Shown here in pieces: positions 13,261 through 61,990 of a DNA stretch of 64,000 nt. Every line of letters starts with the position of its first letter. Within the stretch, counting starts at the first letter, position 1. The stretch lies in assembly GCF_022045235.1 (NCBI RefSeq), contig NW_027266265.1, positions 15,376,001 through 15,440,000 on the forward strand, in the 5' to 3' direction. Made by a program: the position numbers and the translations under genes. Source of the stretch: Haliotis cracherodii (lineage: Eukaryota). The notes beneath the pieces are model-generated. The model was not told the origin of the DNA, did no database searches, and saw only the letters and a program-made list of their open reading frames with translations.

Positions 13261-14640
13261 TTGTTTTCGTGGAACTCACGGGTACGCATGAATGAGAGTG
13301 TATTTAATAATTCCTCTTGTGATTTGGTGACAGAGAAGTGGGGGAGGGAACACTGTAAGGATAAAGTGGATCATAGTAAGGTATCAGGACGACATACGAT
13401 TGCTGCTGGGTCGAATTTTGAATCACATCTGAGTAAATGTAGCGACAGTTAGTAGATAGATAAAATAAATGTTAGAACCGGCCACGTTTAAATATGTGCA
13501 ACGATAATATATAAATTATTTGAAAATGAAAAAAAAAAAAAAAATTTAAATAAAAATGTTTTCATAAACTGGCACTTGGTATAAACTGCACCTTAACAGG
13601 ATGTACGTAGTAAACAAATACTTGTATTAAGAACTCTCAACAATGCTGGGCTTATTCAATGGCATTGTGGTTGGAGTTGATAGATCACTGAGAGGACCTT
13701 GCAGCAAAATTTCACAAATTACGTCATAGGGTATTGTGACGTTTTTAAAAGTATGTGGTACTGAATCATAAACGAACATGTTGGCCCAAATATATTTATT
13801 TCAAAATAATCCAAGATCCCTCAAACTATCAAATGTACTGTCCCTTACGTTGACGTTGTTGTTGCGTTTGGTGTTACGTCTTGGAAGTCACTCCATGTAA
13901 TCAGTCAGCTAAAGTCATAGCACCATTTCTAAGCCAAATCATTTTCGAAAAACATATGGGAATTTATTCTCACCACCTAAGAACGGGTCCCTCTCTCTGC
14001 AAGTACCTTCTCCACTGGATCAAAAGCATCATGAAACCCCTTAATTGCGTCCTTTAGGGCAAAAGATATCTTGTAAAAATGGGCCTCTGTCTGAAAAAAA
14101 CCCAGTAGAATGATTGTAGAGGACACTCATTAAAATACATTCACTTCGATACGAAACCTATCTTCAGGAAGACCTGATGGAACCTCAACAGAACGTCGAG
14201 TCAGCTGACATTCTCAATCAGCCAATCAACGTCGAGGCTTCTAAATTCACGTTACGGGTGAGCGAAGGATTCAGACCAGCAGTTTTGTTTTTGTATGTTG
14301 AGTGCAGTGCTTGTTTTATTAAACTGTTAAACCAGATTGTTACCTTTGAAAACAGTTCCACAATGATCCTGTCTAGTGCTCTCCTGTACGGGTCCGAGGG
14401 GGTCAGTTTGTTGTTGGGGTACACTTCATCCAGGTAGTCAGCGCAGATCAAAGACTCATAGTTCACCTTGTCGTCTTGTTCTAAGATGGGAACATTGCCT
14501 GTGGGGTTCCTGTCCAGGAAACAAGATGGCTTCTGCCTCAAGTCAATATTCACTGTCTCGTATCTGGTGGAAAAAATAACTTTTCAAACAACATTCATCA
14601 TAAATACAATATCATTTTTTTTCTAGAAAATAGAATACAG

Positions 14641-14820
14641 CATGTTCTAATGCGCTGGAACTAATTTCGAAAGTTCAGCATAGGGGCAGAACCTCTGATG
14701 TATACCCTCTCGATGTTATATAATGCTCTAGATTTAGTCTCGCTCTCTCAGCTTAGGGGCAGATGTGTATACTGACACACTGGTTTCTTAATATTCCAGA
14801 ACGAGTCTCGGTCTCTCTCA
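14641..14820 (-). repeat. GSTO exon-2-junction repeat array of pseudogene D (about 3 degenerate units)
   Basis: catgttctaatgcgctggaactaa...cagcataggggcagaacctctgatgtatac and two further units. Confidence 0.85.
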
Positions 14821-17119
14821 CTTCACTTCACCTGTAAGTGTGGCGCCGGGGTAGCTTCGTGGTTAAAGCATTGTTTCATCAAGAAAGAGACCCGGGTTCG
14901 ATTCCCTACATGGTTACAATGTGTGAAGCCAATTTCCGATATCCATCGCCATGCTAGAATACAGATAACCGAATACCATCCGCAGGAAATTGCACAATCT
15001 ATGTTCTTTGCACGAAGTTTACTCTCACCAGTTTACTGTTGATTCCACTGATTTCTTTCACCCCATCATTAGCACTTCAATAAATCAACCAGGTAAGTAC
15101 ATAACATTCATCTTTTGGTTTAGGATTCTAATACATATGTGCACGTACTTAGCTGCATTGCAATGCAAAGGCGTCAAAACAGTCATTTGCAGTAGGCCTG
15201 TTATCAATAGGAACTTGGGGACGACGTGGAGCAGCATCAATCTCCACTTCTTTGGCATGAAGCCAATAAACTCGAACAATCAGTTCCATGAAAGCCTCGA
15301 ATTTATCAAGTATTTTTGACGAATAACGAATTCTTAAAAATGTAAAGAATACAACCCTTTGCCTATAGACTGTGTTGAGCTTAGTATGACATGATCAAAT
15401 AACTAAACAATCAGTGAGCACTTATCAGTGATAAGTTTCCCAAGCCATTCTGTTCCACATCCCAGGGGACCTAGCAGATGTCTTCCTCAGTTAACATACT
15501 GGCCTTGTATATGGTATAAAAAATTGTACACGAAGCAAACGCTTCAATGCACCAAACTATGACTATAGTGTTTGTATGAGCCCCTGTTTCGCTAGCTTTG
15601 CAACTGAGTGATGTACCATAAGATACGTAAAATCCTCCAACCAACAGGTTGATTGCAGTATGATGAGTCTTTCTCTTTCTAATTTGTAGACCCATCATCA
15701 AAGGTGTCTGAAGACATTTGATTTCTTTCATTGACACTGGGCCTAGTCTTGTCCTTACTTTGTGCAGTTCCAATGGTTCCCGAAGGAAGGGCAACACACC
15801 TTCCAAATTGATGTTACCTGGCCTTCGTCCATTCTTGTGATCATGGATGTGTCGGCATCTTTGGAATGCCGGAAACTCAGTAAATACATTCATGCTGCAT
15901 TGGTTATGGCTCAATAGTTGGAAAGACTGTGAACGTCACTTACTTTGTCATTGCATCCATTTGTCATTGCTGTACACGACAGTATTGAATCCAATGTTGT
16001 CTCTGTAATTCTGGTGAGGCTGTTAAATGGAGCAATATTTTCTCTGATACCCTTACCTTCATACAAAGGATGGAGTGATTCTCTATAAATATTAGCTTTG
16101 GCGGTAATGCGGCCGTCAAATCGGCTGTTCCAAGTCAGAGGCGATAATTGTCACCCTAACTGACCAATCAGAATCGAATAACTTCAACTTGTATTTATGT
16201 AGTGTTAATATTTTCTAGTTTCATCTACTCATATGGACAAGAAAGGTTCCCTTGTATTCCTTGTAGAGAGCCTACTGAAGAGGATTGGGAAGTCGGGATC
16301 CGAGGCAAAGTTGACTGAATGTTATCGTAGACATGCTGTCAGGCACTGGTTTTTCTGGTCCACCCTTGGACATTTGCAAGCCGCCATGACATAGCGTTTG
16401 AAGGCAATCAATCTCCAATTCACTTTAGTGTCGCAATACCTAGCAGCATCTTTACCCATAACGTAACCCTTCCTCATATGTCTGGTAACAAATGAATTAG
16501 ATGACCAATTCTTGTTTTTGATGACCAAGCTTTATTATTGGATAGAATTGAAGCACTACAAGAGTATGATTTCATATCTGATCACAAAATCCAACGATCT
16601 TACACTGGCAAATGAATGTTGCCTTCTGTAAAACCCCACATATGTACATTAGCTCGGAGCACCAGGATCGTATGCCTTTGAGATCAAATTGCAGATGTGA
16701 CTGACATCTTGGCTCCAAGATCCTCGGTGATATCATGAAAAGAATTATTGCCAAATGGACATGTAAATGTAATTAAAATAACAATCTTCAAACGTAGATC
16801 TGTCTGTTACAATGTCCTTGACCTAAGATGAATTTTCTTCTAGACCAAAAATCTCCACAAATATCAGCTTGGATCAAAGACTTCCGCAAGTCCAAAGTTT
16901 TGAAATAAACAAATTCTTGTTTTCATTCACAAAAACACATCCGATAACTTTCATTCCAAAGGTTAGCTCATTTCTAAAGTGACAATGTTTGTAGCTCATA
17001 TCTTTGTAACACATTATCCTGAACATCTTTTAGCTAAACACTCTATAAAGGCATGTGAATATGCAGGTACAATAGCTATGTTGTCATCTGCACAGTTCTG
17101 TGAAGATATATATGCAGAT

Positions 17120-18871
17120 TCAAAGGCCAACGTCATAGTCTGGTTTTCCAGCTTTGACTGTTTCTATGAAATGAATGTGTGCCGGTGTGTCCCAGCGACA
17201 TTTCTGTACAGCTGGTACCTTGCCCATATTTTCAATCCACTTGGTAAGCTTGGGGTACCGATCAGCTGTCACCCTCGCTTCCTTCACTAACTGAGCCATA
17301 GCGTCAAACCTTTCAACGTGAGGCCAAATCGTGAAGTCAATCATCTGAACAGAGCTGCCTGAAATGTAAATAGATGAGATTGAGAAGGAATAACGTTTGA
17401 AATATTTGCAGCAGATATTTAAGCGCAACCGTGAACGGCGGGTGCGGATCCCGGGGGAAAGTCAAGGGGTTAGGACTACACCTATTCAAAATTATATATG
17501 GACCCAAATGACCACCAATATCAAACTACCGTTTTATTGAAATACCTCAGTGTGTATATCTTTGTCTGATACCAAAATTTAATAAATTCAGAACATCCAG
17601 CATAATAAGTGAACATTGTATGTTTTTGTAATACCTAGGGCCATATTCTTATTCTTATTCTTATTCTTCTTCTTATTATTATTTACAGATTAAAATAAAA
17701 AAATGCAGCAAAGAGGGCTTGGGTCATCCTGGTACGGTCAGGCTGGTTAGGCTCATCATCAGCTCATGGCCCTTTCCCCCTCTACACGCAGCCCAGATAG
17801 CGAATGGGACTTCTCCCAGGAAGTGCTGCCCAGTCAAACCCACCCAGAACATTTCCGAGAACGCGAAGACTCCCCAACACTGCAGCCTTCTGCATTACCC
17901 AGATAGTCAGAAGGTTTGTATCCTCTCCCAATGCCAGTCAACAGATTGGGAGGTACCAAACCTAAGGCACCGAGAACAATTTGAAGTCGGACAACCTGGT
18001 ACTTGAGATGCAAGCGTGACTTTTCGAAAGCGAGGCCTGCATATTTGCCATATTTTTCCTGAATCTTGCCAATCAAATTAGTGCCAACAGGGACAGAAAA
18101 TTCAATGATGTAAATGACTTCATTGGATTTATCAAACAGGACAAGATCAGGTTTGTTGGCCTGGATAAGTGTGAGGCTGAAAACGGGCCTATTCCAAAGA
18201 ATCTTGTATTTATTATTTTCCATGAGGCCCTCTAAATAGTCTGTGTCGTACCATGGATGGACCTCTGTGTCAAAACTACAATCATTGCAGTGATACAATG
18301 ATCGAGCCACCCCATCATGTCGCTTAAGATACTGTGTTTGTGCCAAAGCTGGGCATCCACTGACAATGTGTTGGGCAGTCTCATTAAATTCATTGCATAA
18401 TCTACATTTTATATATACATTTTGATGCAAAATCACACATTGACGGTTTCGAGTTGGAAGTGACTGGTCCTGAGCAGCAAACATAAAGCCTTCTGTTTCA
18501 CTCTTCAGGCCAGCCGACTTCATTCAAGCGAAGGGCTCTGCAGGGTTGCTGACACTGCACATTAACTCGATGTAGTGGTCGTTCAGAAAACAGAGTCTAG
18601 GCCGATTTGATATGGCACTTCGGTTGGTTAACACTCATTTCTGTGCCGTCCAGCAGTACAAAACCATTAAAAAAATTGAGATTATGGCCCACATCTTTGG
18701 CTCGTTTTAGAAAACTGTGGAATGCCTTGTTTTCATCATGAGTCTTGACATACTTCACAAGAGGACCATCAGACAAATAAATGTGTGCAAAAGTGCACAA
18801 AACAATTCTATCACAAAGAGCCTCCACATTAATAATTCCACGCACTCCCATCATATTATTGTTGTTGTTTC

Positions 18872-18906
<35 letters not shown>

Positions 18907-21900
18907 ATATTTAGTGTAACGCTTAATAAGGTTACGGAAAGGGACGAAGTGCTGACGGCCTTAACATATGATACGAGCAGCCATGATATCACCTGACTTC
19001 AGTCTGCGGACACTTACGAGTGGTCACGATATCATTTGGCACTTTCGTCTTGTTCGGTAATCAATAATTCAACGTGATAAAAAAAAATAGCCGAAATGGC
19101 GCTAACTGAAATCGACACCACACGTCAATTCTCGAGTTTACGATTACGCATGTATGGCAAGGTGTTCAATCATTCCTTGAGTGATTTTGTGACATAAAAG
19201 TGTAGGAGGCAACCCTGAAAGTGAATGAGTGAGTGAGTTGGGTTTCACGCCGCTTTTAACAATAAAACAGTTATATCGCGGCGTGTCAGCTTAATATGGA
19301 AGGAAAGCCCGAAGTGATTCAGGTATCAGACGTTTACCACTTCGGTGAAACCCACGAGCACGGGTATGGTGCTGACAAACCTAGAAACATAATCGGGACG
19401 AACCGGGATTCGAACCCACAATCAGAGGTTTCTGGTGTGCCCAAGGGACGCAACTCTGCACAGCGAATCGCGGCGCCTGAGACGACTGGGCCACCCGTGC
19501 CCCCGAACCCTGAATGGATGACGTGGGCCATGGTAAGGAATCAGGAAGACCCAGGTATTGCTAATGGGTCGAACTTGAATCATATCATAGCATTTGTAGC
19601 TTTTAGTAATAGACAGATAGTGTTTATTTGAAATATGAATGCTTCCATAAACCGTAGCTGGCAGTATGTAGAGAATTGTATGCAGATCCGATGACCCTAG
19701 CAACTCTGCTGCTAGGCTAACGTCAGAGGGCGTTGTTTCGCCGGTGTATCTTGCAGCAAAATTTCACAAATTACATGAAGTTTTCTTAAAGTTTGAGTTA
19801 ATTAAGGAATGAACATTAACAACGTACATAAATTATTTTTTTTCAACATAATCCCAGGCATCTCAGAATATCAAATTTACTGTCCCTTACGATGAAGTTG
19901 TTGCGTTTCGTATTATTTCATCCGTTAGTTAAAGTCATAATCACCATGTTTACGCCAAATGTTTTTCTTTAAAAATAAGTAAAAATTCTTACCACCAAAG
20001 AACGGAGTCCCCCTCTCTGCGAGAGCCTTTTCCACTGGACCAAGAGCATCATGGAATCCCTTTATAGCATCCTTTGGAACATCTTTGCCATAAGCTATCT
20101 TGTAAAAAAGGGTCACTGCCTGAAATATGTAACATTTGTATGAGAGTAGGGGAGACGTGTCTTCTGACAGTAGTATAACACAGTCGTCTAAAGGGTCGCA
20201 AATGGTTGCGTCCCTTAGTCGTGCATGATCCGCTGGTAGCTGGGTCAAATCCCTACTGCATACTTATTCATGATCCTTGGTTTGTCAACGCCATACTTGT
20301 CTTCGTCGGTTTCTCCAAATTGGTAAATGTCAAGGGTCGGCATCAATTTAGGATCTAATCTCAACCTTGATATACCTGACATACTACCGGAAAACCCGCT
20401 CACTCACTGCTCTCTTTTAAGGAAAATACTATTATGTGGCCATGTGAATCCTATTTCGAACGTTAAAGAGTTTAAATAATGCATATTTCGTTTTATAGTC
20501 ACCACCACTAGTACTTATCGTTGCTTTGTACAAGAACACCACACTCGGGTCAACTAGGCTTATTCCGCTCCTTTACATTATCCCTCGAGCAGCAACAATT
20601 TTATTTAAATCTCCAAGAAGAAATTACGGTACTTACTTAGGAGGTCCAGTCAGGTGAATTGTTTAATTAGTTTTATTAATTTCGGTACCAATGAACGAAG
20701 CATTCAAACAAGCATATTTGATATCTGTATCTCGAAACGAACTAAAACGACCAGTTCCGAATGTTGATAATTAAGGTGGCACCATTATATTGTGGGTGAT
20801 ACACCCTGTCGTTTCCCTGCCAGGGCATCTACACCAAAAGAGAATGATAATATTGAAGGATCATTTGGGTTCAGTGTCAGTGTCTTTGTTGTTGTACAAT
20901 TCGAAAGATAACCGACTCGTTTTCAAAAGTGAAACTTCTGCTTTGCTCAAGTTCTCATGTTACATATATCTAGATTCGGACGTCATATTTCGTTCAGGGT
21001 TCACTTGATATTGCAGGAAATTACTGTAAACCGTCCAATGTGGAATCCTGCCAAGTACTGACTTAAGGTCAATCAAACTGAATAGATCACAGTGAAAACA
21101 CAACGTGGTATTTGACGAAGTTTGACGAATCAATTTAGTAACGCAACACAGATTGGCAACCCACGACACGGGTACGGTGATGACAAACGTAGAAACATAA
21201 CCAAGCGAATCCAGGATTCAAACCACAGATGATCGGGTTCTAAGGGACGGAACTCTGAGCAAGATTAGGCGACTGGGTCACGTGTGTTCACCATGATATA
21301 CATTGTACTTGAAATTCGTATCGTATCAAATAAAACACCATCACTTAAAACATGTAACGTACCTTTTTCAAAATTAGATTCAGAACTGACTGAAAATTCA
21401 CTATGGTTATCACTTGCATGTGCAGTGTACTACACGTACTTGTGTTATGTATTTAATAAACCAGATTAAACTCCTATCCTGTACATATGCTTGTCAACCA
21501 TACTCCGACATCACTTGCTTGATAACGGCGTTAGAACCTACATAGAAACGTCGCTCCTAATTGTAACAAAGAAGTTGTTCATCCATATATCTTATCCTTA
21601 CTTAGTACTTCTAAATGCCTCTCAAAGAAATAAACCAGATTGTTACCTTTGAAAACAGTTCCACAATGAGCCTGTCCCGTGCTCTCCTGTAAGGGTCCGA
21701 GGGAGTCAGTTTGTTGTTTGGGTACACTTCATCTATGTAGTCAGAGCAGACCAGAGACTCATAGAGCACCTTGTCGTCTTTTTCTAAGATAGGAACAGTC
21801 CCGTTAGGGTTCTTGTCCCAGAACCAAGATGGCTTCTGTTTCAAGTCAATATTCACTGTTTCGTGTCTGGTGGAAAAACAAATGACGTTTTTTGAACAAT

Positions 21901-24900
21901 ATTCATCATAAATGCAATGTCAAAATGTTTTAGAAAATGGAATTATACAACATGTTCCAATGCGATAGAACTAGCTATATACTAATGACCTATAATATCA
22001 GCATCGGGGCAGAACGGAGGGTGGATTCTTACCGTTCTTTTGAGCCAAATCTAGTCTCGTTCCCTCGGTATTGGGGCCGAACGGCTAGTGTACGCTCACT
22101 CTGTGCTCTTTGGAACAAAACTTAGCCACACTCTCTCAGCATACGGGTAGAACCTCGAGTGATTTCTCAATCTATGTTCTTATGCGCTAGAACGGATCTC
22201 GCTTTCTCATACATATGACAGGGACAGAACCTCTCGTGTACACTTTCTCTATGTTTCCTGTGCGTTAGAACAAATCCCGTCTCTAAGCATAAGATCAGAT
22301 CTTCTGGTGTATACTCACTATATTTTCTTACGCGCTAGAACTTATCTTGCTCTCTCAGCATGGGGACAGAAACTCCAGTGCACACTCACTGTCACCGTGT
22401 CGTAAAACCCAGGTCGTCACGGTCCTGTGATGTTAGTACCTTCCTACTCATCCCTGTCCAGCGGTCGGACGTATGGCAAGCCGTTTTCAAAATATTTCGG
22501 AATTACTTATATCATCACTTGTTTTTAAGACATCGGTATTCTATTAAAGATGTCCATTATGTTTTTTTAAAATATCAATAAATAATCAAAGATGAATTAA
22601 TTTCTAATGTCCAAAATACAATTACTGATGTCTTAAAATGTGACTGTGATATAAAAAAAATCATTTCGTGATATGTCTAAATTTATTTAAGATACAGTTA
22701 AAACAATTGCCATCCAACTGAACATAATCATATTCGAAATATATTCAAGATGTCTTGAAAAAGGTTATACACATTCACAACTGCATGGCACGTTGAAAGT
22801 GTTTTGTAACGTTGATGTTCACACAGTAGCGGGACTGTGTCGTACTATTGTAGATATTTCCCATGTATTTATGGTCATTTTTGCCACCTTACATTGTACA
22901 TATCTGGCTGTATATGTTTAATGGCACAACTGGGTACATAAAGTTTGGTGCTTTATTTTTATACCTATATCTCTAATACTGGTTTAGTAGTAAGTTTCCT
23001 ATTCATGTTTTCCATACTTTAGAAAACACAAGTCTGTTCATTCACGAGGTTAGATGGTGTATGCTCACTCTTTGTTCCTATGCGGTAGAACTAATCTTCT
23101 TCTCTAAGCTGAGGGATAGAACCTCAAGTGTATACTCACTCTATGTTCTTATGTCCAAGAACTAGTCTCGTTCTCTCAGCATAGGGGCAGAACCTCAAGT
23201 ATATACTCACTCTATGTTCTTATGTTCAAGAACTAGTCTCGTTCTCTCAGCATAGGGGCAGAACCTCAAGTGTATACTCACTCTATGTATTTAGTGTTCA
23301 AGAACTAGTCTCGCTCTCTCAGCATAGGGGCAGAACCTCAAGTGTATATACTCACTCTATGTTCTTAGTGGTCAAGAACTAGTCTCGTTCTCTCAGCATA
23401 GGGGCAGAACCTCAAGTGTATACTCACTCTATGTTTTTATGTTCAAGAACTAGCCTCGTTCTCTCAGCATAGGGGCAGAACCTCATGCTGTAGATCCTTA
23501 GTTTGCCCGGTGTGAGCGCCGGGAAGGCAGATGCTGAAACCAAAGTAACTTGATTTATTGATAACCATGGAAATGACATCTAGTCGTGAATCATACAAAT
23601 CAAAACGTCACCGGGGTACGATGAAACACTAGGGCAGCAAGGTGACAGCATAGAGTTGGTATTTTCGAAGGAGGCCATCCTCATGCGTGTCTATTCTCAG
23701 CGGACATCAGATTCCAACTTCCTCTTTGACCTTGACGCCTATATGGATATCTCCCAGGATCTCAAGGATAGTGAGTGAGTGAGTGAGTGAGTTTGGTTTT
23801 ACGCCGCTTTTAGCAATATTCCAGCAATATCACGGCTTCACACATTGTACCCATGTCGGGAATCGAACCCGGATCTTCGGCGTGACGAGCGAACGCTTTA
23901 ACCACTAGGCTACCCGACCGCCCCCTCAAGGATAGAGTGTGCCTACTTGAATATAGAGAGTTTGCAATTTTTTTCATACTTCCGGGGCGGTCGGGTAGCC
24001 TAGTGGTTCGCTCGTCACACCGAAGACCCGGGTTCGATTCCCGACATGGGTACAATGTGTGAAACCCATTTCTGGTGTCCCCTGCCGTGATATTGCTGGA
24101 ATATTGCTAAAAGCGGCGTAAAACCATACTCACTCACTCACTAATACTTCCGACCCTTTATTGCCAGAAAAACAAAAATATAATTGGAGAGTGCAATTAT
24201 ATCTTATTTTTTGTATCACTGACAAATGGTTTGAAAAACATATACCGTAAGTTAACCAATAAATAATAAAAGTCCTTCGTATGACAAAAAGACGATATGT
24301 GTTATTTATAGAATTCAGTGATCAGTACCCACACATATATACAGAGTAATATAGTTCAAGCCCGAACGTTGTCTTGATACCAAACACAAATATTACTCAA
24401 TGAATGAATGTCATGTTTTATGGATTTAAGGCGGCTTGAAGTGTACATTTACGTCAAGGTTTAAATGTCGATAGAACACTGAGAGAGGCATTCAACTCAC
24501 GTCACACCCAACTGGAAACAAATGGACGCAACCCTGCACGACAAACCGACCCAAGCCCATTCAAATAATTGTGAAACTATCATCCTGCAACTGATACCAG
24601 ATAACGTGAATAATGAGATGGTGAGCCGTGTCTCTAAACCCTAATTGTCCAAATAGTCCAACGATAATAACTGAGATAGTTGTTAAACTGTCTCGTGAGT
24701 CCAGGCGTGGGTGTGGCGGTTGGTTAGCCTCGTGGCTAAATCGTGCGTATGATGTCCCGGGTTTGATTCTTTGTAATAGAGCTCATTCTTGGTGTGCCCC
24801 ACTCACTCACTCACTCGCACAATCCTTCCCTTCCCCATCCTCTCCCTCCCGAGCTCACTCACTCTAAAACAGAAAAGCTCCTTCCAGTAGTCTCACTCGA

Positions 24901-26785: not shown

Positions 26786-28532
26786 TGAATGAATTCAACT
26801 CAGACTCTTTTGAATGTACTCAGAAATCACAATGCATGTTACGATGACTAAGTACAATTAATCGTTGCTGTACGCCACTGGAATATTCTTTGTCCACTGA
26901 ATGTTCACTGAATGTCCACTGAAGGTCTCTCGGGGCCGCTCCAGCAGTCATCGCTATCACTTCATTGTTTAAACAACCTTGATATGTAAAGTCCATTTTG
27001 CATTGGACATACGTTGACTATATAACGATGTTAAATACTCCTTACCGGACGATTACTACCAGTAACCAGTACCATATAAGTGTACATATGTCACAGTAAG
27101 AAATCATTGTAAAAATAGGCATTTCATGAAATCCCTAAGCATTTCAGTAATCTCATGACATCTATGAATATCTTACATACTTAAATGAAATTACTGAAAT
27201 GTTGCACGAAATACCTAGTTTCACAATCGTACTGTAACATATACAACGTAACGTTACACTGTGGACGTGGTTCGTTATTCCGCACATTTGCTAATCGGGA
27301 CGATTTCAGTGGCGCCACTACCGTCCGGATTACCGGGGTTTCCTTGTATGTATATGTTTCCCTTATGGTATAATAGCAGAGCGGAAAAACATTAACTTCC
27401 GCTATGAATTGCCACCTCAATCCCGACTATACTATTCAAAGTGAAAGTGTGCAAACTTTATTGCCATGGAATAAAAAATCCATGTCGAATAAAAAGATAT
27501 TAATGTTTTATAGGTGAGTCGTTTGATTTCTTTCAATGACACAGGGTTTAGTCTTGAAGGAAGAGCAGCCCACCTTTCAAATGAATGGTATCATTTGACC
27601 TTCGTTTTTGTTGTGACCAGGCTGCGGTGGCGTTTTTGGGAAGCCGGATATACACTAAATAATACACCAGTAATGAACAATATGCAAAGTTTGGTGCTTT
27701 ATATGCTCAAGCATATTTTTATAAAATCATTGTAATTTAAAACTTAACATAAAACAGGCATTGGAAGTGTGATCGCCGGCAACTTCGTAAGACAATGTGA
27801 AGTGGGCACCCCTAAAGAAAATTAAGCAAGCATCCCAAGGTTTTGTCCTACATTGCACGTCACCGCTCATTGTGACGTAGCAATTATGACGTCACATTCG
27901 GTAATAGCAAAGCTATATTTTCAGCTGTATGTGGACCCCAAACTTTGTAATAACCCCCTTAGCCGATTTCTATCTTTTTATCTGCCCAAAATGTATTGCC
28001 ACACATAGTTGGAATATTGCAGTAATCATTGATAAGCGCCACATTTTCAGCTCCACCTGGACCCTAAACTTTGAAATACCCCCCTCAGACGATTTTTAGC
28101 TTATTGTCTGCCCATATGTTTTAAATGTATTGCCACACATAGTTGGAATATTGCAGTAACAACAGCTTAGCATTTTGTAACTTACTGACAGTGACGCGAC
28201 ATGGGCACAATGTGTGAAGCCCATTTCTGGTGTCCCCCGCCGTGATATTGCTGGAATATTGCTAAAAGCGGCGTAAAACCATTCTCACTCGCTCACTCAC
28301 TGACAATGACGAAGAAAGAAGTAATTGTCTATAAAACAATCACCAATTCACTCTAGTATGGCAATACCTAGCAGTATCGTTACCCACAACGTAATCCTTC
28401 CTCATTGTTTCTGGTAACAAATGAATAAGATAAACCAATACCAAGGGTTTTTTTATGATCAAGGTTTATTATTTGATAATATTGAAACAGTACAAGTGCA
28501 TAATTTCATATTTTGATTACGCAAACAACAAG

Positions 28533-29549: not shown

Positions 29550-32500
29550 TCAAAGTCCGAAGTCATAGTCTGGTTTTCCAGCTTTAGATGTTTCTATGAA
29601 ATGGACGTGAGCCGGTGTGTCCCAGCGACATTTCTGCACGGCAGGCACCTTGCCCATGTTTTCAATCCACTTCGTAAACTTGGGGTACCGATCAGCTGTC
29701 ACCCTTGCTTCCTTCACTAACTGGGCCATAGCGTCAAACCTTTCAGTGAGAGGCCAGATCATGAGGTCAACCATCTGAACTGAGCTGCCTGAAATGTAAA
29801 CATATAGATGATACTGAGAGGGACAATTCGGACTGTTTGCAACAGATGTTTACGCATATTCATGCACCACGGGTGCATCTTCGGGGGGATTGTGGGTGTG
29901 GGAGGGAAAGCTGTCATGGAGTTTGATGTTGACATAGATATTGCTACTAGATCGACTTTTGAGTTATATCTGAGCAAATGAAGCGATAGGTAGCATTGGA
30001 GAGATAGTGTTCGAATTTGGACTGGCGACGTTTTGAATGTGTGCAGCGTAAATGAATAGATAAAGTTGAAACTGATACAAATCCTTTAAATAACAAACAT
30101 TAACCCTCCACGAGCTGGAGCTTGCGATAAAATGCGCCGTGGCTTGGAGTATTTAGTAAATATCTAATGACACCGCTGGGCTTTTTCACTGATATTGAAT
30201 CACATATCAACAAATGAAGCAAAAGGTTGAGGATCGATATCGTGTTCGGAACGCCGATGTTTGTATTTGGCGGCGTCAATAACTAAATAAAGCTGAAACT
30301 GACCCGTCATGTGGCTGGAATATTGCCGAGTGCGGCGTTAAACAACAAATAAACAACATAAACTGGCGGTTACTAAATAATGTGCCGTAGCAGGCTGTAA
30401 ATAGATATTGAATACTCAACATCACCGGGCTTATTCAATGATCTCAAGTGTAGAGATGATAGATCACTGAGAGAATCTTATGTACACCAGGTAACCCCCT
30501 CTACTTTGTTGCTAGGCTACCGTCACAGGGCCAAAAATTAATTTCTTTCAAAATTATCTCATGCCATTTAGAATATCAAATGTACTGTCCTCTACGTCGA
30601 AGTTGATGTTGCATTTCGAATTAACGTGGTGGATGACAGTCCATGTGATCCTTTTATAGCTAAAGTCATATCACCATTTCTAAGCCAAATAGTATTTCTT
30701 GAACAATATGGGAAAAAATATTCTTACCACCAAAGAACGGGGTCCCTCTCTCTGCAAGAGCCTTCTCCACTGGATCAAGAGCATCATGGAATTCCTTGAT
30801 AGCATCCTTTGGGACATCTTTGCCATAAGTTGTCTTGAAAAAAGGGCCCATTACCTGAAATTATTAACAGTAGTATGCTAGTTGGTGACACAGGATGCCG
30901 AGTCGTCAAAGATTCGTAAATGGCTGCCAATCTTAGTCGTTCTTGGATACGCTGATAGCTGATTCAAATCCCTAATGCATACTTTTCTATGATCCCTGAT
31001 TTGCAACGCCCATGGCCTTGCTCGTCAATTTCAACAAATTGGTACTTATCTGGGACTGGCATCACTATAGGATTTCCTCCCATATTAATCTGGCACACCG
31101 TGAAAAAATTGAAACACTGTTCAAAGCTCCAGGAAAACCCAACTCACTCACTCACTACTTTCTTTTAAGGAAAATACTATTATGTGACAATACGAATATT
31201 ATTTTGGTAAGTGAAAGAGTTTAGATAATATACATTTATTTTATAGTCACCAATATATATCATTGCTTAGTACAAGAAGACCACACTCGGATCAACTCGG
31301 CTTATTCCGCAACCTAAATTATACCTCGGGCAGCAACAATATAATGAACATACTTTACTTCGGTATACCAGTGAGGTCTTGGGGCACCTCAACAGAAGGT
31401 CAAGTCAGGTGAACTTTTTAATCAACCAATCAACGTCGATGCTTCTAAATTCTCGATACGAATGAACAAAGCATTCAAGACAACATGTTTGATTTTTTTT
31501 GTTTCTCGAAATCGAACTAAACGACCACTTCCGAATGTTGATCATTCACATTCATTGTTGATCATTAAGTATTTTATACATCCTGTTTCCCTGCCGTGGT
31601 ATCTGTATATCGATGGATTATCTGTGTTCTGTGTTCCGTGTACAATTCGAAATTACCAAATCGAGGAAGTAATTAAATGTAACCGAATGGTTTTGGAAAA
31701 CGAAACTTCTGACTGGCTCAAGAGCTCACGCATTATTCATTTAGACTGGTCCGTCAAAGTTCGCTCAGGGTTCGCCGACAGCAATGGAGTGATGATATTG
31801 CATGAAATTACCGTAAACCTCCCAATATGGATTCCTGCCAAGTACTGACCCAAGGCCAATTAGACTGAGTCGAGCAGAGTGAAAACACCATACAGTATTT
31901 GAGGAGTTTATAAAATATCATCACGGACCTGATAACGCAGCATAGATTTGGAACCACCAACAAGGTTACGGTGATGACCAACGAAGATTCATAGCCATGG
32001 GAACCTAGGATTCGAACCAAAGATCGTCGGATTCTAAGGCACGGAGCTCTACACAGCTAAGGTACCTTAGACGACAAGGTCATGCGTGTTCTCGGTGATA
32101 TACTTAAAAGACGTGCCACATGAACTTAAAAACTATAACTTAAAGCATTTAATGTTTCTTATTTCAATGTGATTCCGAACTGACTTGTAGTCTTTAGGGG
32201 ATTCTTTCATTAATTCGAATGGTAGTACTTCAGCGTACAGTGCACTGCTTGTGTTTTTCATTAGTAGACGACAGTGTTACCTTTGAAAACAGTTCCACAA
32301 GGATCCTGTCCCGTGCTCTCCTGTACGGGTCCGAGGGGGTCAGTTTGTTGTTTGGGTACACTTCATCCAGGTAGTCAGCGCAGACTAGAGACTCATAGAG
32401 CACCTTGTCGTCTTGTTCTAAGATGGGAACAGCGCCGTTGGGATTCCTGTCCAGGAACCAAGATGGCTTCTGCTTCAAATCAATATTCACGGTCTCGTGT

Positions 32501-35500
32501 CTGTTGAAAAAACAAATATATTTTTTTAACAATATTCATCATAAATACAATGTCAAAATGTTTTTTTTAGAAAATAGAATACAACATGTTCTTATGCGCT
32601 GGAACTAGTCTCGCTCCGAACAGCTTGTGTATACTCAACGTTCTTTTGAGCTAAAGCTGAAGTCGTTCCCACCGCACCGGGGAAGACCGTCTGGTGTAAA
32701 CTCACTCTATGTTCTTTGGAGCTAACATTAGTCGGTTGTCTCTCATTCTGCCTACAGTTTATAATACACAATATACGTTTTATTAGGGTATTAGTTTCAC
32801 ATGACTGAATGCTTTCTGAATACCTGTCTTCCATTTCTCATCATAGATTAATCCTTTCAACACAAAGACCACTAAATAAAGAAATGTGAATACATGTCAA
32901 CCTGTCTTGCCTCATAACATGCAATGAGAACTGACTTCTAGTGCAAAACATTTCACCAAACCATAGTCAGAACGGCCAAGGGCATTCTATCTCTAAAAAT
33001 AGAAAAATCTAATCATATCAATACGATAATAGAAATGTTATCAATACATATTTGAATTTTGACTTGGCTTATTTATGCTAAGATTAAATGAATGGATATA
33101 AGTGTACTTGTGATGTGATATTATGTATATGATAATGATGTTATGTTGTCATAAATGCAATATGATGAATTGTAGATGTTGACATAAATGAATATCAATG
33201 TATGATTGCTTAAAAAAATGATGTTATATCAGAAACGATAAAGATATGAATACTTAAGGATTTAAGTTGTATTTGTTGACGTTCATCAGCTGATGAGGAT
33301 AGTTCCTCGCGTGAGCAAATTCCATGATGAACGTCAACAAATACAACTTCAATACTTATATTGACAAATACATATATCATAACAAAACTATCCATTAAAC
33401 ATCAAACTTTCATTATTTGAAGCGAACTATATCAACGCGGAGAGTCGTGACGTCATCCGTCCGAAACATTCCATGTGGAGCGGCTACGGCAATGTCATCC
33501 ACTTGAAAAGAGCACCCAGAAAAAGTTAGCGTTGGAAAGAAATCCAGACCCGGCTGATGCTGAAAATGGATTGATATTAACGTTCTGTGAACTTTGAGTG
33601 TGTTTGAGTCATACTACGGCTGCTGATGACGGGAATTACCGCTTGAGGCGATGCGGTTGGATTTCCCGAAGCAATACACGACAGTGTGAAGCTCAGTGAT
33701 TTCTTTTGGTAACAGACACCCTTTTGTGTACTTACTTAATGTTCTTATGCACTGGAACTCATCTCGCTCTCTCAGCATAGGAGCAGAACATGTAGTGTAT
33801 TCTTACTTAATGTTCTAATGCGCTGGAACTCATCTCGCTCTCTGAGCATAGGGGCAGAACATACAGTGTATACTTACTTTATGTTCTTAAGCGCTGGAAC
33901 TCGCTCTCTCAGAGTAGGAACAGAACCTCTAGTGTATACTAGTATTTACTCCATGTTCTTATGCGCTAGAACTAATCTTGCTCACACAACATAGGTACAG
34001 AAAATCTAGTTTACACTCACTCTATGTTCTTATGCGCTAGAACTTATCCTGCTCACTCAACATAGGTACAGAAAATCTAGTTTATACTCACTCTATGTTC
34101 TTATGCGCTAGAACTAGTCTTGCTCTCTCAGCAAATGGGCAGAACCTCATGCTGTAGATCCTCATTTTGCCCGGGGTGAGCGCCGGGAAGGCAGACGCTA
34201 AAACCAAAACAAATTGATCGATTTATCGCCATGGAAATGTCATCTAGTCGTGAATCATACCAATCAAAAAGTCATCGGGTACGATGAAACACAAGGGCAG
34301 CCAGGTGACAGGATAGAGTTGGTCTTTTCAGAAGAAGGCCACCCTCATGCTTGTCTATGCTCAGCGGACATCAGACCCCAGTTTGCCCTTTGACCTTGAC
34401 GCATATACAGATATCCGTTCAAGAATCTCAATGATGCATGTAGACATTAGTCACACATGATATTTAGTCACACATGATATTTAGTCAAAACAATGACATT
34501 TTTTACTTTTTATTGCATGGTTAATGTACCCGCTGACCCTACATGTCAGGAATGGGTTTAAGTTATTTTGGAAACGCCGAACCTGATAAATACATTCATG
34601 AATAAAACATAAGTAATTATTTCCCTGCCTCACGCAGACAAGTGGTATGTGTTTCATTACCCGACATTTTCCGCTCAAATATTTCTCACAGCGTCACTAG
34701 TACTACACAGATTGTTTCCTTTGTTCACATGTAAACGCGAAACATTTTTGACATTCCTGTCACGTTTCACAAAACAATGCTGAACAGAAAATATAGAATT
34801 TGAAATTATTCTCATACTAATTACCCTTTATTGCAACAAGAGCTGAAAAATAATGGGAGAGTGAAATGTTATTTTCCTTGTTATAGTGATGAGAAAATGT
34901 TTTGAGAAAAATATACCGTAAATGAACCTTATATGTACCTTACGATGACACAAAGACGACCCACAATACACAGAACATGCACAAAGTCTCATAAAAACTT
35001 TGTGATTCACAGAATTTAGTGATCTGTACCCCAGCATAAAGTAATATAGTTCACGTTTGAGTTTACGCCGTATTTACCAATCTTTCAACAATATCGCGGC
35101 GGGGGGACAACAGAAATGGGCTTCACACATTATACCCATGTTTGGAATCGAACACGGACTTTTGTTTGACAAGTAAACGCTTTAACCCCACCGCTTCAGT
35201 TTCTGTTTGAACGTTTCTTTGACACAACACAATAATATTACTCAATACATGAATTTTATATGGTTTTAAGCCCGGTTAAACGAGTACGTCACGATCTGTG
35301 AGCTAAATGTGGATGGAATGCCGAGATTTGGACTCAACTCACGTCAAGCAAATCCTAGAAACAAAGGGACGCAACCCTGCACAACATTCGGATCCAAGAT
35401 CCCTCACTTAAATAATCATCTGGCCCATCTATGAGCGTGTATATATTTCACTTGAGAAATTGTTTAGTTAATGTTGTTTATTTTTGCTGATACGTCTTGT

Positions 35501-42800: not shown

Positions 42801-43539
42801 ACAATACTAACAATGCATAAGAATACAGATATGAATTTGGTCAAATGCAATAGTGCCGAGTACGTTATCATAGACACGAAATGACGACACATGCTTGAAA
42901 AGACCTTTTTGTTCTGGGTGGAGAATCTCTGTGTAATAACTGGTCATGGTGGAGGTGTCATGTTGCTCCGCGGGTAACAACTGGCGGTGGTTACTCTCAA
43001 TGTAACAAATTGGCAATGGAAGCTCTCCTGGGAACAACTGTCCGGCACTGCTTATTGTTCGGCTTCACAATAGGCTTTGATAATTCTCCGGGTAACCACT
43101 GACGCTGGTAATTCTCCGGGTAACGGCGGGTAACAATAGTCGATGGTAATTCTCCGGGTAACATCTGGCAGGGTTGACAATACCCAGGCCCACACCAAAG
43201 CTACACATTGCATATTCGTTTACATTAAAGTCCATAGTCATAGTCTGGCTCTCCAGCTTTGGTTGTTTCAATGAATTGGACGTGAGCCGGAGTGTCCCAG
43301 CGACATTTCTGTACAGCTGGTACCTTGCCCATGTTTTCAATCCACTTGATAAGCTTGGGGTACCGATCAGCTGTCACCCTCGCTTCCTTCACTAACTGGG
43401 CCACAGCTTCAAATCTTACAACGTAAGGACAGATCATGAAGTCAACCATCTGAACAGAGCTGCCTGAAATTACAAGAGATGATTCCTAGAAGGTTACAAA
43501 GTCAGAGACAGAATATGAATATGATCTCTGGATTGGGAG

Positions 43540-44030: not shown

Positions 44031-45344
44031 CACTAGACAACAAAGGTGGCATCGTAGAAAATCAGAGAACTGTTTAGGAACATCACTGAACTAGAGTGTG
44101 ACCCTCACAAACATAATCATTGTCGTTCTATAACATATTCTTCCTGTTCTATAACGTTATTGACCTTTGGCTAAGTTGGGCTGTTGGGATCGTTTTATGC
44201 CCAGTCTTTTTTTTATAAATAGTTGGGTCTTACCACCAAGGAACGGGGTCCCTCTCTCCGCAATGCCCTTTTCTATCCGATCAAAAGCATCCAAGAATCC
44301 TTTCACGTTCTCTGTTCTTTCATCATCTCGACCTTTCATTGTTTTGTAATAATAGGTCACTACCTGAAAATCAGTATATATACAAGGGTAATTATGTCCA
44401 TAAAGTTTACATCTATGCCCAGTCAATGACATTATGATTATCCCACATTTGTATTAAACGGTTCAAATATACTCAAATATCTAAAAATCAAACATTGTTT
44501 TTAGTCTTTAGATGGTTTTGACAATTCTAACGACCGATGCAGAAGCTTAAGGTAACTTCAGTTGGCTTATTCCGGGATTAGGTGAGGTTGAGTGTACTAA
44601 TAATTGTCACCTGTTTACCTTAGTGGAACAGCCCCACACAAATATGAGGTATTTACTCTGCTCACCGTTGGAAGATGTATTAATCAAGCAGGCAGAACTA
44701 GGCAGTGATACCTGTCACATTTCACTGATCTGTCAGATGACTGGCACATCTGACAATTGAGAGAGAACCATGGTCCCTTGATGAAGCCCAAGCCTTCCTT
44801 CCTCAAAGCGTATATTCATACACATTTGTTAAAAGCGGCGTATAATCCTTAGTTTATCGAACAACGAATTTATAGAATTGATTTACAGAGCCTGTAATAT
44901 TCACCCCCGGTGATTTATTTATGTGTTCCCTTATCTCATCCGATGTCGCAATATTCCGATTCTTGTGCTAATATGTTTCTTTGTCTGATCTTCTAAATTT
45001 GGACTGAGTTTGCTCTGCTAAATACTCCACATACACTTGACCCAGATGCGGCAGTGAGTCACAGCGATCACAACACGTGCCACATTCAGATCTGCCAGAC
45101 ACTCACTCAGCTGAAGTGTATCTCTACAGCAACACACAACTCACTGTCGAGAACTTCCTGAATGCGGCGAACTCAAGAATGGTGTCGTGTTAATTAATTG
45201 TTATCACACCGACGATCACGCGGCTACCCGCACACCCATTTAAAAAGATTATTTTTTGTTCCCGAAACTCTGGGCAAAAGAAGGGCTGATAAATTTGACT
45301 CAGACTGCTATGTGTGTGTGACTTCCGGCCGTATTCAGGTTTTA

Positions 45345-52199: not shown

Positions 52200-52815
52200 A
52201 ATAGGGAAAAGGGAAAGTATGACTGCATGTACGTCATGAATATTGGGTATTTCATCGTTATTATAAGGAATGTATGATTTCTTGAACATTGGGTATTTCA
52301 TCATTATTATAGGGAAAGGGGAAAGTATGACTGCATGTACATTTGGGTATTTCATCATTATTATAGGGAAAGGAGGAAGTATGACTGCTTGTACATTTGG
52401 GTATTTCATCATTATTATAGGGAAAGGGGAAAGTATGACTGCATGTACATTTGGGTATTTCATCATTATTATAAGGAAAGGGGAAAGTATGACTGCACGT
52501 ACATTTGGGTATTTCATCATTATTATAGGGAAAGGGGAAAGTATGACTGCATGTACATTTGGGTATTTCATCATTATTATAGGGAAAGGGGAAAGTATGA
52601 CTGCACGTACATTTGGGTATTTCATCATTATTATAGGGAAAGGGGAAAGTATGACTGCGCGTACATTTGGGTATTTCATCATTATCATAGGGAAAGGAGG
52701 AAGTATGACTGCACGTACATTTGGGTATTTCCTCATTATTATAGGGAAAGGGGAAAGTATGACTGCAAGTACATTTGGGTATTTCATCATTATTATAGGT
52801 AAAGGGGAAAGTATA
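52200..52815. repeat. 54-bp minisatellite, about 10 units
   Basis: Unit gaaagtatgactgcatgtacatttgggtatttcatcattattatagggaaaggg. Confidence 0.95.
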
Positions 52816-54658: not shown

Positions 54659-54965
54659 TAAACAAGTGAAAACTGTGTTGAATAACATCTATTTTGTATT
54701 ACCACGTGTATATTACGCGACATTTACCTTACGTTGTATATAATGTAAACAAGTGAAAACTGTGTTGAATAACATCTATTTTGTATTACCACGTGTATAT
54801 TACGCGACATTTACCTTACGTTGTATATAATGTAAACAAGTGAAAACTGTGTTGAATAACCCCTAATTTATATTACCACGTGTATATTGCGTGACATCTT
54901 CCTTACGTTGTATATACATGTAAACAAGTGAAAAATGTGTTGAATAACCCCTATTTTGAATTATT
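54659..54965. repeat. 87-bp tandem repeat, about 3.5 units
   Basis: aacaagtgaaaa(c/a)tgtgttgaataac recurs at 54661, 54748, 54835 and 54923. Confidence 0.9.
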
Positions 54966-61409: not shown

Positions 61410-61990
61410 AAATATCTAGTTGCGGTTAGTGAGTTGCAGTTAGTTATAGGTCCAATTGATGTTAGTGATACACACAGTTGATGTAAATGATATATCCAGT
61501 TGCTGTAAGCGATATATATGCAGTTGCTGTGATATATCCAGTTGATGTTTGTGATACACACAGTTGATGTAAATGATATATCCAGTTGCTGTAAGCGATA
61601 TATATGCAGTTGCTGTGATATATCCAGTTGATGTTAGTGATACACAGTTGATGTAAATGATATATCCAGTTGCTGTAAGCGATATAACCAGTTGCTGTAA
61701 GGGATATATATCCATTTTCTGTAAGTGATATATCTAGTTGCTGTAAGTGATATATCCAGTTGCTGAAATCGATATATCCAGTTGACGTAAGCAATATATC
61801 CAGTTGCTTCAAGTGATATATATATCCAGATGCTGTAAGTGATATATCCAGTTGCTTAAATCGATATATCCAGTTGATGTGATATATCCAGTTACTGTAA
61901 GTTCTGCATCAAATTGTTGTTTATATTATGTGCAGCTGCAATTCATACAGTATCCAGCTGTAGTTAGCGATATATGCAATTGTGTTTATG
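61410..61990. repeat. Degenerate ~21-bp minisatellite (gatatatccagttgctgtaag) with higher-order units
   Basis: Directly visible. Confidence 0.85.

What the first reader, a model, noticed from the sequence alone, without database searches (positions are those of the whole stretch)
23057..23533. GSTO intron carrying tandem copies of the gene's own active-site codons plus splice donor
Seen: the last 58 nt of exon 2 (…[18 protein letters not shown], including the catalytic Cys) plus the first 13 nt of intron 2 (GTGAGTATACACT) are repeated head-to-tail. There are five intronic copies at 71-74-bp period, and all five keep a GTGAG donor. Skipping the true donor reads ATA GAG TGA, an immediate in-frame stop, so any downstream donor gives a truncated, probably NMD-targeted transcript rather than a longer protein. 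Inference: the array could be (i) a bank of decoy 5' splice sites/U1 sites tuning GSTO output by copy number, (ii) a gene-conversion reservoir for the active-site segment, or (iii) recurrent neutral slippage. I do not know a precedent in GST genes, but cannot search.
Basis: partly seen in the sequence, partly recalled or inferred. Interest (0 to 1): 0.85.

Follow-up and report, generated by a model that had tools for sequence, protein, structure and literature searches.

The report
Splice-donor "mirage" minisatellite in abalone GSTO
The intron after the active-site exon of an abalone omega-class glutathione transferase gene is largely built from head-to-tail copies of that exon's end plus its splice donor; this is real and old, but it is a known kind of repeat ("mirage" minisatellite) and shows no sign of being kept for a function.

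Summary
On the minus strand, 23055-23484 is a 71-74 bp tandem array of six units. Unit 0 is the last 58 nt of GSTO exon 2, including the catalytic Cys codon, plus the first 13 nt of intron 2. Five intronic copies follow, each keeping GTGAG, and reading past the true donor meets TGA at once.

The array is not unique to this gene. Older, decayed copies of the same unit fill the rest of intron 2 (21950-22375). They also lie in the same intron of tandem paralogs B, C and D, and the last three units are colinear in A, B and C. So the array predates the gene duplications.

Old units diverge at about the synonymous rate, and their donor positions are no better conserved than other columns. The four young units carry an A-specific exon substitution, so they were re-copied from the exon later.

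Tandem repeats spanning exon/intron boundaries are published as "mirages" in lancelets, and the human ABCA7 intron-18 VNTR also includes a splice donor. This scan had already noted the same kind of array elsewhere in this genome (KIAA2013, a lectin gene).

Verdict: an effectively neutral donor-spanning minisatellite.

The parts
23428..23535 (-). GSTO gene A, exon 2. It carries the catalytic Cys in SMRFCPYAE and ends ...AACATAGA.
   Evidence: Matches human GSTO1 residues 12-47 and Pfam GST_N families. Acceptor TTTCAG and donor were read.
23422..23427 (-). Authentic 5' splice site GTGAGT of intron 2 (phase 2).
   Evidence: Joining to exon 3 at 21866 gives ...[13 protein letters not shown]..., as in the Haliotis rubra protein P0001.
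23414..23484 (-). Unit 0 of the array: the last 58 nt of exon 2 plus the first 13 nt of the intron. This is the template copy.
23126..23413 (-). Young intronic units A1_1 to A1_4 (74, 72, 71 and 71 nt). They are 90-97% identical to unit 0 and all keep GTGAGT.
   Evidence: They share the A-exon-specific CTTGAACAT state and cluster with the exon on very short branches.
23055..23125 (-). Edge unit A1_5, 71-76% identical to the others. Its donor reads GTGAGC and it keeps the ancestral CTACCGCAT state.
22376..23054 (-). Spacer that splits the array. About 22463-22790 is a dispersed repeat present in many copies genome-wide.
   Evidence: 64 scored matches of about 80% identity on many contigs, from 385 candidates.
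21950..22375 (-). Old array A2: six decayed units of the same exon-end-plus-donor sequence. At the donor position they read GTGAGT, lost, lost, GTGAGC and GGTAAGA; the last unit is truncated before the donor.
   Evidence: nhmmer E 1e-16 to 3e-3. Sequence. Colinear with B2 and C.
21867..21949 (-). Non-repeat 3' tail of intron 2 with the polypyrimidine tract and CAG acceptor. It is conserved in genes A, B and C.
   Evidence: 91% identity A vs B and 84% A vs C.
21647..21866 (-). GSTO gene A, exon 3.
   Evidence: Human GSTO1 residues 52-124, E 1.7e-21. Pfam GST_N_3. Coordinates.
33721..34077 (-). Paralog B: five intronic units (B1) directly after B exon 2 (34092-34199). Their donors read GTGAGT, GTAAAT, GTAAGT, GTAAGA and GTAAGT.
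   Evidence: TRF 33725-34133, period 71, score 407. Also.
32575..32750 (-). Paralog B: three old distal units (B2) ending about 85 nt before B exon 3 (32281-32500).
14635..14822 (-). Paralog C (probable pseudogene; its exon 2 is broken): three old units just upstream of exon 3 (14344-14563).
8120..8232 (-). Relic D: two old units, cut off on the upstream side by a tRNA-like SINE.
   Evidence: The decayed last exon lies at 4857-5040.

Best explanation
This is a 'mirage'-type minisatellite: a tandem array whose unit spans an exon/intron boundary. Here the unit is the last 58 nt of GSTO exon 2 plus the 5' splice site and 13 nt of intron. The array arose by slippage or unequal exchange in an ancestral GSTO gene and came to fill almost all of a formerly short intron 2. 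It was then inherited by the tandem paralogs A, B, C and D, and was split in A and B by independent transposon insertions. Only the first copy is under selection, because it is the exon. Unequal exchange keeps re-seeding exon-like copies next to the exon: the four young A units, and B1_1/B1_2 in gene B. Distal and edge copies decay at the neutral rate. Inferred, not shown: in the transcript the first donor is joined to exon 3 and the whole array is removed as intron. Any transcript that used a downstream copy would carry TGA 3 nt after the exon end, at least 71 nt before the next junction, and would be a nonsense-mediated-decay substrate. The array is therefore a tolerated by-product of mutation, not a device.
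For: The structure is confirmed. The same unit occurs only in this GSTO cluster genome-wide, in intron 2 of A, B, C and D. The last three units are colinear in A, B and C and are followed by the same 85-nt intron tail, so the array predates the gene duplications. Positional homologues differ by JC 0.42-0.50, which is at or above dS 0.31-0.40 for the same gene pair, so old units evolve neutrally. In 20 old units the donor hexamer has mean conservation 0.82 against 0.83 overall, ranking 26 of 65 windows, and GT ranks 21 of 69. By eye, GT survives at the aligned position in about 10 of 16 units that cover it, close to what the average per-site conservation predicts. The young units carry the A-exon-specific CTTGAACAT, whereas the B exon and most old units have CTAGCGCAT. 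They also keep AGA/AAG where the A exon now has the synonymous AGG/AAA. So they are later copies of the A exon. The edge unit is excluded from homogenisation, as described for mirages (PMC3087553). Genes A and B are under purifying selection (dN/dS 0.16-0.18), so the array has not disabled them. Minisatellites are common here: about six distinct arrays with TRF score above 150 in 64 kb, and an unrelated 30-bp x 30 array in the same intron of a distant paralog. There is no RNA structure signal (z = -1.57) and no Rfam family in the array. Precedents: lancelet mirages that duplicate splice sites without aberrant mRNAs (PMC3087553, PMC3902484), and the ABCA7 VNTR that includes the exon-18 donor and has a one-unit-retention PTC isoform (PMC5954066).
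Against: No transcript data were obtained, so use of the first donor is inferred from the open reading frame, from selection on the gene and from the annotated H. rubra protein junction. The four young decoys are identical to the real site at positions -3 to +6 and share 58 nt of upstream context. On general knowledge of 5' splice-site competition, some use of them is expected, so a real effect on output, adaptive or not, is not excluded. The conservation test has low power: units are short and related by descent, and the alignment was fitted to a profile.
Confidence: 0.75

Rival explanations
1. The array is a bank of decoy 5' splice sites. The intronic copies bind U1 and/or are used as donors. 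This diverts part of the pre-mRNA into PTC-containing, NMD-degraded transcripts, so GSTO-A output depends on copy number (regulated or at least consequential unproductive splicing).
For: Four decoys have the same 9-nt splice-site core and the same 58 nt of upstream exon context as the true donor. Every decoy product carries an early TGA. In gene B the decoys changed GTGAGT to GTAAGT/GTAAGA, which are still strong donors. In human ABCA7 a donor-containing VNTR does yield a one-unit-retention PTC isoform, and VNTR length correlates with expression and splicing (PMC5954066).
Against: Old units lose the donor at the same rate as other positions and evolve at the neutral rate overall. Lancelet mirages are reported not to disturb splicing (PMC3087553, PMC3902484). 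In ABCA7 the unit-retention isoform did not depend on VNTR length. The retention of donors in the young units is explained by their youth.
Confidence: 0.15
2. The array is a gene-conversion reservoir: the intronic copies serve as donors that repair or diversify the active-site segment of exon 2.
For: High identity between the exon and the young units makes conversion mechanically possible.
Against: The copies already carry stops, frame-shifting indels and non-synonymous changes (TAA-interrupted units A1_1 and A1_2; E to G in A1_4), so conversion into the exon would mostly be harmful. In gene B the exon moved to CPF while all copies keep CPY, so no back-conversion is seen. The A exon acquired two synonymous changes that the copies do not share.
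Confidence: 0.03
3. The array is an assembly artefact: the extra units come from mis-assembly of reads over a short repeat.
For: Tandem repeats are error-prone in assemblies, and raw reads were not available.
Against: Each unit has private substitutions or indels that give a unique path. Homologous arrays exist in three other gene copies, with colinear units. The array is interrupted by a transposon copy, as expected for real old DNA.
Confidence: 0.03
4. The array records intron gain by tandem duplication (Rogers model): the duplication itself created intron 2.
For: The array once filled nearly the whole intron, and tandem duplication is a demonstrated route to new introns (PMC3443670).
Against: A distant paralog 1.37 Mb away has an intron at the same codon position and phase with no trace of this unit. 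The unit already contains a complete donor plus 13 nt of intron, and a separate conserved 85-nt 3' tail exists. So the intron existed first and was expanded.
Confidence: 0.03

Closest known systems
'Mirage' minisatellites of lancelets (Adh3, globins BflGb6/9, troponin C, PGBD5); PMC3087553, PMC3902484
   Same: These are tandem, minisatellite-like duplications whose unit spans an exon/intron boundary and repeats the splice signal. Units are 10-160 bp. The authentic copy sits at the edge of the array. Inner units evolve in concert and the edge unit is excluded from homogenisation. The array lies in the intron, and the genes stay functional.
   Different: This case is in a mollusc, not a cephalochordate. 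The array is shown to predate a series of gene duplications, to have been split by transposons, and to have been re-seeded from the exon later. Splicing and length polymorphism, which were shown for lancelet loci, were not tested here.
Human ABCA7 intron-18 VNTR (PMC5954066)
   Same: It is an intronic VNTR that starts at, and includes, the canonical splice donor of the upstream exon. Use of the next unit's donor retains one unit and gives a PTC/NMD transcript.
   Different: The ABCA7 unit is 25 bp and purely intronic from the GT onward, with 12-427 copies. The unit here is 71 bp and carries 58 nt of coding sequence including the catalytic Cys codon, with only 5 young and about 6 old copies.
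Intron gain by tandem genomic duplication (Rogers model; Hellsten 2011 and Gao & Lynch 2009 as summarised in PMC3443670)
   Same: An internal tandem duplication places duplicated splice signals in a gene, and the spliceosome removes the extra copy.
   Different: No new intron was made here. A pre-existing intron was lengthened, and only donors, not AGGT pairs acting as donor and acceptor, were duplicated.
Polyubiquitin UBC tandem dual-specific splice sites (PMC10809524)
   Same: It is a tandem array in which every unit carries a splice signal at the same place.
   Different: UBC units are whole coding repeats whose sites work as both 5' and 3' sites and give in-frame isoforms. The units here lack an acceptor and are out of frame (71 nt, with an immediate stop).
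Omega-class glutathione transferases (human GSTO1/GSTO2, PDB 1eem, 3q18)
   Same: The host gene matches GSTO1 best. It has the N-terminal thioredoxin-like domain with the catalytic Cys in the C-P-Y/F-A motif and a GST C-terminal domain.
   Different: It sits in a lineage-specific tandem cluster of five copies. Two (A, B) look intact and three are decayed or truncated.

Membership tests
Mirage (exon/intron-boundary) minisatellite | Head-to-tail repeat with a minisatellite-size unit (about 10-160 bp) | tested here: met
   TRF period 71, 6.0 copies, 90% matches, score 661. Units are 71-74 nt.
Mirage (exon/intron-boundary) minisatellite | The unit spans an authentic exon/intron boundary and repeats its splice signal | tested here: met
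   The unit is 58 nt of exon 2 plus GTGAGT and 7 more intron nt. GTGAG is present in all five intronic copies.
Mirage (exon/intron-boundary) minisatellite | Concerted evolution of inner units, with edge units excluded | tested here: met
   u0-u4 are 90-97% alike and edge unit u5 is 71-76% alike. The tree groups the exon with A1_1-4 on short branches, and neighbouring pairs B1_1/2 and B1_4/5 group together.
Mirage (exon/intron-boundary) minisatellite | Normal mRNA is still made from the authentic copy | not testable with these tools
Indirect evidence only: dN/dS 0.16-0.18 for A vs B, and the H. rubra protein P0001 reads ...HKNIE-HE... across this junction.
Mirage (exon/intron-boundary) minisatellite | Length instability or polymorphism between alleles | not testable with these tools
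   There is one haploid assembly and no second copy of the locus in it. Copy number does differ between paralogs (A 5+6, B 5+3, C 3).
Regulated unproductive splicing / decoy 5' splice sites | The alternative sites are conserved above the neutral rate | tested here: not met
   The donor hexamer ranks 26 of 65 and GT ranks 21 of 69 in old units. Old units have JC 0.42-0.50 against dS 0.31-0.40. Power is low.
Regulated unproductive splicing / decoy 5' splice sites | PTC isoforms from the alternative sites are observed and respond to NMD block or conditions | not testable with these tools
   There was no access to RNA runs.
Intron gain by tandem duplication (Rogers) | The intron is absent from relatives that lack the duplication | tested here: not met
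   Distant paralog F has an intron at the same codon and phase, with no copy of this unit.
Omega-class GST (host gene) | GST N- and C-terminal domains, with best similarity to GSTO | tested here: met
   Pfam GST_N_3 E 7e-10 and GST_C_2 E 1.8e-5. The top PDB hits are all GSTO1/GSTO2, E 1.7e-21.
Omega-class GST (host gene) | Catalytic cysteine in the N-terminal C-P-F/Y-A motif | tested here: met
   Exon 2 reads [11 protein letters not shown], aligned to GSTO1 residues 12-47 and to an omega-class pyrimidodiazepine synthase.

The most novel reading that the evidence does not exclude
The exon/donor junction is itself a hot spot that keeps spawning copies. The same boundary was re-amplified independently in paralogs A and B long after the first array formed. 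The resulting identical decoy donors may divert a copy-number-dependent share of GSTO-A transcripts into NMD, which would make array length a heritable, fast-mutating control of detoxification-enzyme output in abalone.
Probability: 0.1. Interest if true: 0.6.

Novelty: new member of a known kind. Interest (0 to 1): 0.3.

Why it matters
In itself this is one more example of a published repeat type, and this scan had already found the same type elsewhere in this genome.

Its use is as a dated case. Because the array sits in a family of tandem paralogs, three things can be separated. First, the array is older than the gene duplications. Second, old units decay neutrally, donors included. Third, new units are re-seeded from the selected exon copy, so the array preserves earlier states of the exon (AGA/AAG in gene A, CPY in gene B).

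If RNA data showed that the identical decoy donors are ignored, the locus would be a clean natural test of how a spliceosome picks the first of six equivalent 5' splice sites.

Tried and rejected

No cross-species comparison was possible.

Exons were searched one by one by reference. Exon 1, which must supply ATG+G, was not located.

Structured or small RNA in the array: folding three units gave z = -1.57. Rfam found nothing in the array, only a tRNA-like SINE at 23848-23919. Rejected.

Dispersed repeat or transposon origin of the unit: rejected. The unit occurs only in this GSTO cluster.

Same array in more distant GSTO paralogs: absent.

Recursive splicing or mini-introns between units: considered by eye and rejected. 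Units have no polypyrimidine tract or acceptor in a usable register, and the only AG-GT juxtaposition would shift the frame.

The unit tree is mostly unresolved (72 columns). Eight truncated units were left out: A2_5, A2_6, B2_1, B2_2, B2_3, C_1, C_3 and D_2. I rely on diagnostic substitutions and colinearity instead.

Papers not held: PMC2791625 (Gao & Lynch) and PMC117041 (Cañestro 2002). They are cited only through PMC3443670 and PMC3087553. One literature query on 5' splice-site competition returned nothing relevant, so that point rests on my own knowledge.

Full report
**Observation**

The finding is real. Tandem Repeats Finder reports 23057-23485 with period 71, 6.0 copies, 90% matches and score 661.

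Read on the minus strand, unit 0 (23484-23414) is the last 58 nt of an exon plus GTGAGT and 7 further intron bases. Five more units follow head to tail: 23413-23340, 23339-23268, 23267-23197, 23196-23126 and 23125-23055. GTGAG begins at 23427 (the true donor) and at 23355, 23281, 23210, 23139 and 23068.

Units 0-4 are 90.5-97.2% identical. The last unit is only 71-76% identical to the others, and its donor reads GTGAGC. In the exon frame, unit 0 reads [19 protein letters not shown] and then TGA. Exon 3 begins at 21866 after CCACCAG.

**Host gene**

The exons were searched one by one by reference.

- Exon 2 matches human GSTO1 residues 12-47, including the catalytic Cys motif.
- Exon 3 matches GSTO1 residues 52-124 at E 1.7e-21, and all top structures are omega-class.
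- Pfam finds the GST N- and C-terminal domains.
- The nearest database protein is annotated as GSTO1-like from Haliotis rubra, at 81% identity. The genome is therefore an abalone; the scan's earlier notes call it black abalone.

The window holds five tandem minus-strand copies. I list them by descending coordinate.

- E: only exon 4 and the last exon were found (44366-43228).
- B: 34201-29553.
- A: 23534-17123. This is the gene of the finding.
- C: exon 2 is broken, so it is a probable pseudogene.
- D: a relic.

A and B look intact. Between them dN/dS is 0.18 (exon 3) and 0.16 (last exon), with dS 0.31-0.40.

**The array is much larger and older than reported**

A profile of the six units finds about 25 significant copies in the window, all on the minus strand.

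- Gene A: a second, decayed array of six units (22375-21950) runs up to about 85 nt before the exon 3 acceptor.
- Gene B: five units follow exon 2 (34077-33721), and three more lie just before exon 3 (32750-32575).
- Gene C: three units lie just before exon 3 (14822-14635).
- Relic D: two units (8232-8120).

A DNA search of the whole 1.18-Gb genome finds this unit nowhere outside the cluster, so it is not a transposon.

The last three units of A, B and C are colinear, and the same intron tail follows them. The array therefore existed, and already filled nearly all of intron 2, before these genes duplicated.

The gaps inside the A and B arrays contain two different dispersed repeats, each with dozens of scored copies across the genome at about 80% identity. 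These are independent transposon insertions that split an originally continuous array.

**Tests of constraint**

Positional homologues of the old units differ by Jukes-Cantor 0.42 (A-B), 0.50 (A-C) and 0.42 (B-C). That is at or above the synonymous divergence of the same genes, so the old units drift neutrally.

Across 20 old units, mean column conservation is 0.83. The donor hexamer scores 0.82 and ranks 26th of 65 windows. GT ranks 21st of 69. Read by eye, GT survives at the aligned position in about 10 of the 16 old units that cover it. That is roughly what per-site conservation predicts.

The power is low, because the units are short and related by descent, and the alignment was fitted to a profile.

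**History of the young units**

The A exon and units A1_1-4 share CTTGAACAT. The B exon, the edge unit A1_5 and most old units have CTAGCGCAT or close variants.

The young units also keep AGA and AAG, as the B exon does, where the A exon now has the synonymous AGG and AAA. The young units are therefore copies of the A exon made after A and B separated, and they preserve an earlier state of that exon.

In gene B, B1_1 and B1_2 share the B-specific TAAAC intron variant with the B exon. All B units keep CPY (or a decayed form of it) while the B exon now reads CPF.

The unit tree is poorly resolved. It does group the A exon with A1_1-4 on very short branches, and it pairs neighbouring units B1_1/2 and B1_4/5.

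This is ordinary minisatellite turnover by unequal exchange. The one selected copy, the exon, acts as a constant source of new units, and edge units escape homogenisation.

**What it most likely does**

Nothing points to a function. Folding gives no structure signal (z = -1.57), and Rfam finds no family in the array.

Minisatellites are frequent here. About six distinct arrays score above 150 in this 64-kb window. A distant GSTO paralog 1.37 Mb away has, at the same intron position and phase, an unrelated 30-bp x 30 array. That paralog also shows that the intron predates the array, so this is intron expansion, not intron gain.

Inferred, not shown: the first donor is spliced to exon 3 and the array leaves with the intron. 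Transcripts using a later donor would carry TGA at least 71 nt upstream of the next junction and should be degraded.

The four young decoys match the true site at -3 to +6 and in 58 nt of upstream context. From general knowledge of 5' splice-site competition, some leakage is plausible. I therefore keep a 15% rival in which the array measurably lowers output.

**Comparison with what is known**

- Tandem repeats spanning exon/intron boundaries were named "mirages" in lancelet Adh3. They are also described in lancelet globin, troponin C and PGBD5 genes.
- Published mirage units are 10-160 bp. Many carry splice signals, normal splicing is retained, and evolution is concerted with the edge units excluded (PMC3087553; PMC3902484).
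- The human ABCA7 intron-18 VNTR starts at the exon-18 donor. Use of the next unit's donor gives a one-unit-retention PTC isoform (PMC5954066).
- Related ideas are intron gain by tandem duplication (PMC3443670) and tandem dual-specific splice sites in UBC (PMC10809524).
- The scan's own notes record the same kind of array elsewhere in this genome: KIAA2013 introns, a lectin gene and a general note. I verified the literature they pointed to, but not those loci.

**Limits**

**Verdict**

The reading is a neutral, donor-spanning "mirage" minisatellite (confidence 0.75). It is a new member of a known kind, of modest interest.

Noticed in passing
L009 3433-4330 (G000:C2:16763432-16764329), minus strand: A distant GSTO paralog 1.37 Mb away has an intron at the same codon and phase. 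About 40 nt after its donor, that intron is filled by an unrelated 30-bp unit repeated 29.9 times at 96% identity. The unit contains no GT on the gene's strand.
   Followed up: partly
window 4857-44366, minus strand: The window holds five tandem GSTO copies. A and B look intact. C has a broken exon 2 and a deletion in exon 4. D is a relic with a frame-broken last exon (4857-5040). For E only exon 4 (44226-44366) and the last exon (43228-43476) were found.
   Followed up: partly
window 22463-22790 and 33251-33712: Two different dispersed repeats, each with dozens of scored copies genome-wide at about 80% identity, are inserted in the middle of the A and B arrays. The B element shows inverted self-matches and looks MITE-like.
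   Followed up: partly
window 23848-23919 (-); similar sequence at 24037-24148, 28192-28303 and 8233-8260: Copies of a tRNA-derived SINE-like element (Rfam tRNA 30.1 bits, E 0.0011) are scattered in GSTO introns. One of them truncates relic D's array.
   Followed up: no
window 17834-18523 (-): A 229-aa ORF that looks, by my own recall, like the C-terminal part of a non-LTR retrotransposon protein lies in the intron between exon 4 and the last exon of gene A.
   Followed up: no
window 52267-52814; 54659-54963; 61451-61901; 2781-3174: Other strong minisatellites are present: 54 bp x 10, 87 bp x 3.5, 22/44/86 bp, and 27/95 bp. I did not check whether any of them touch exon boundaries.
   Followed up: no
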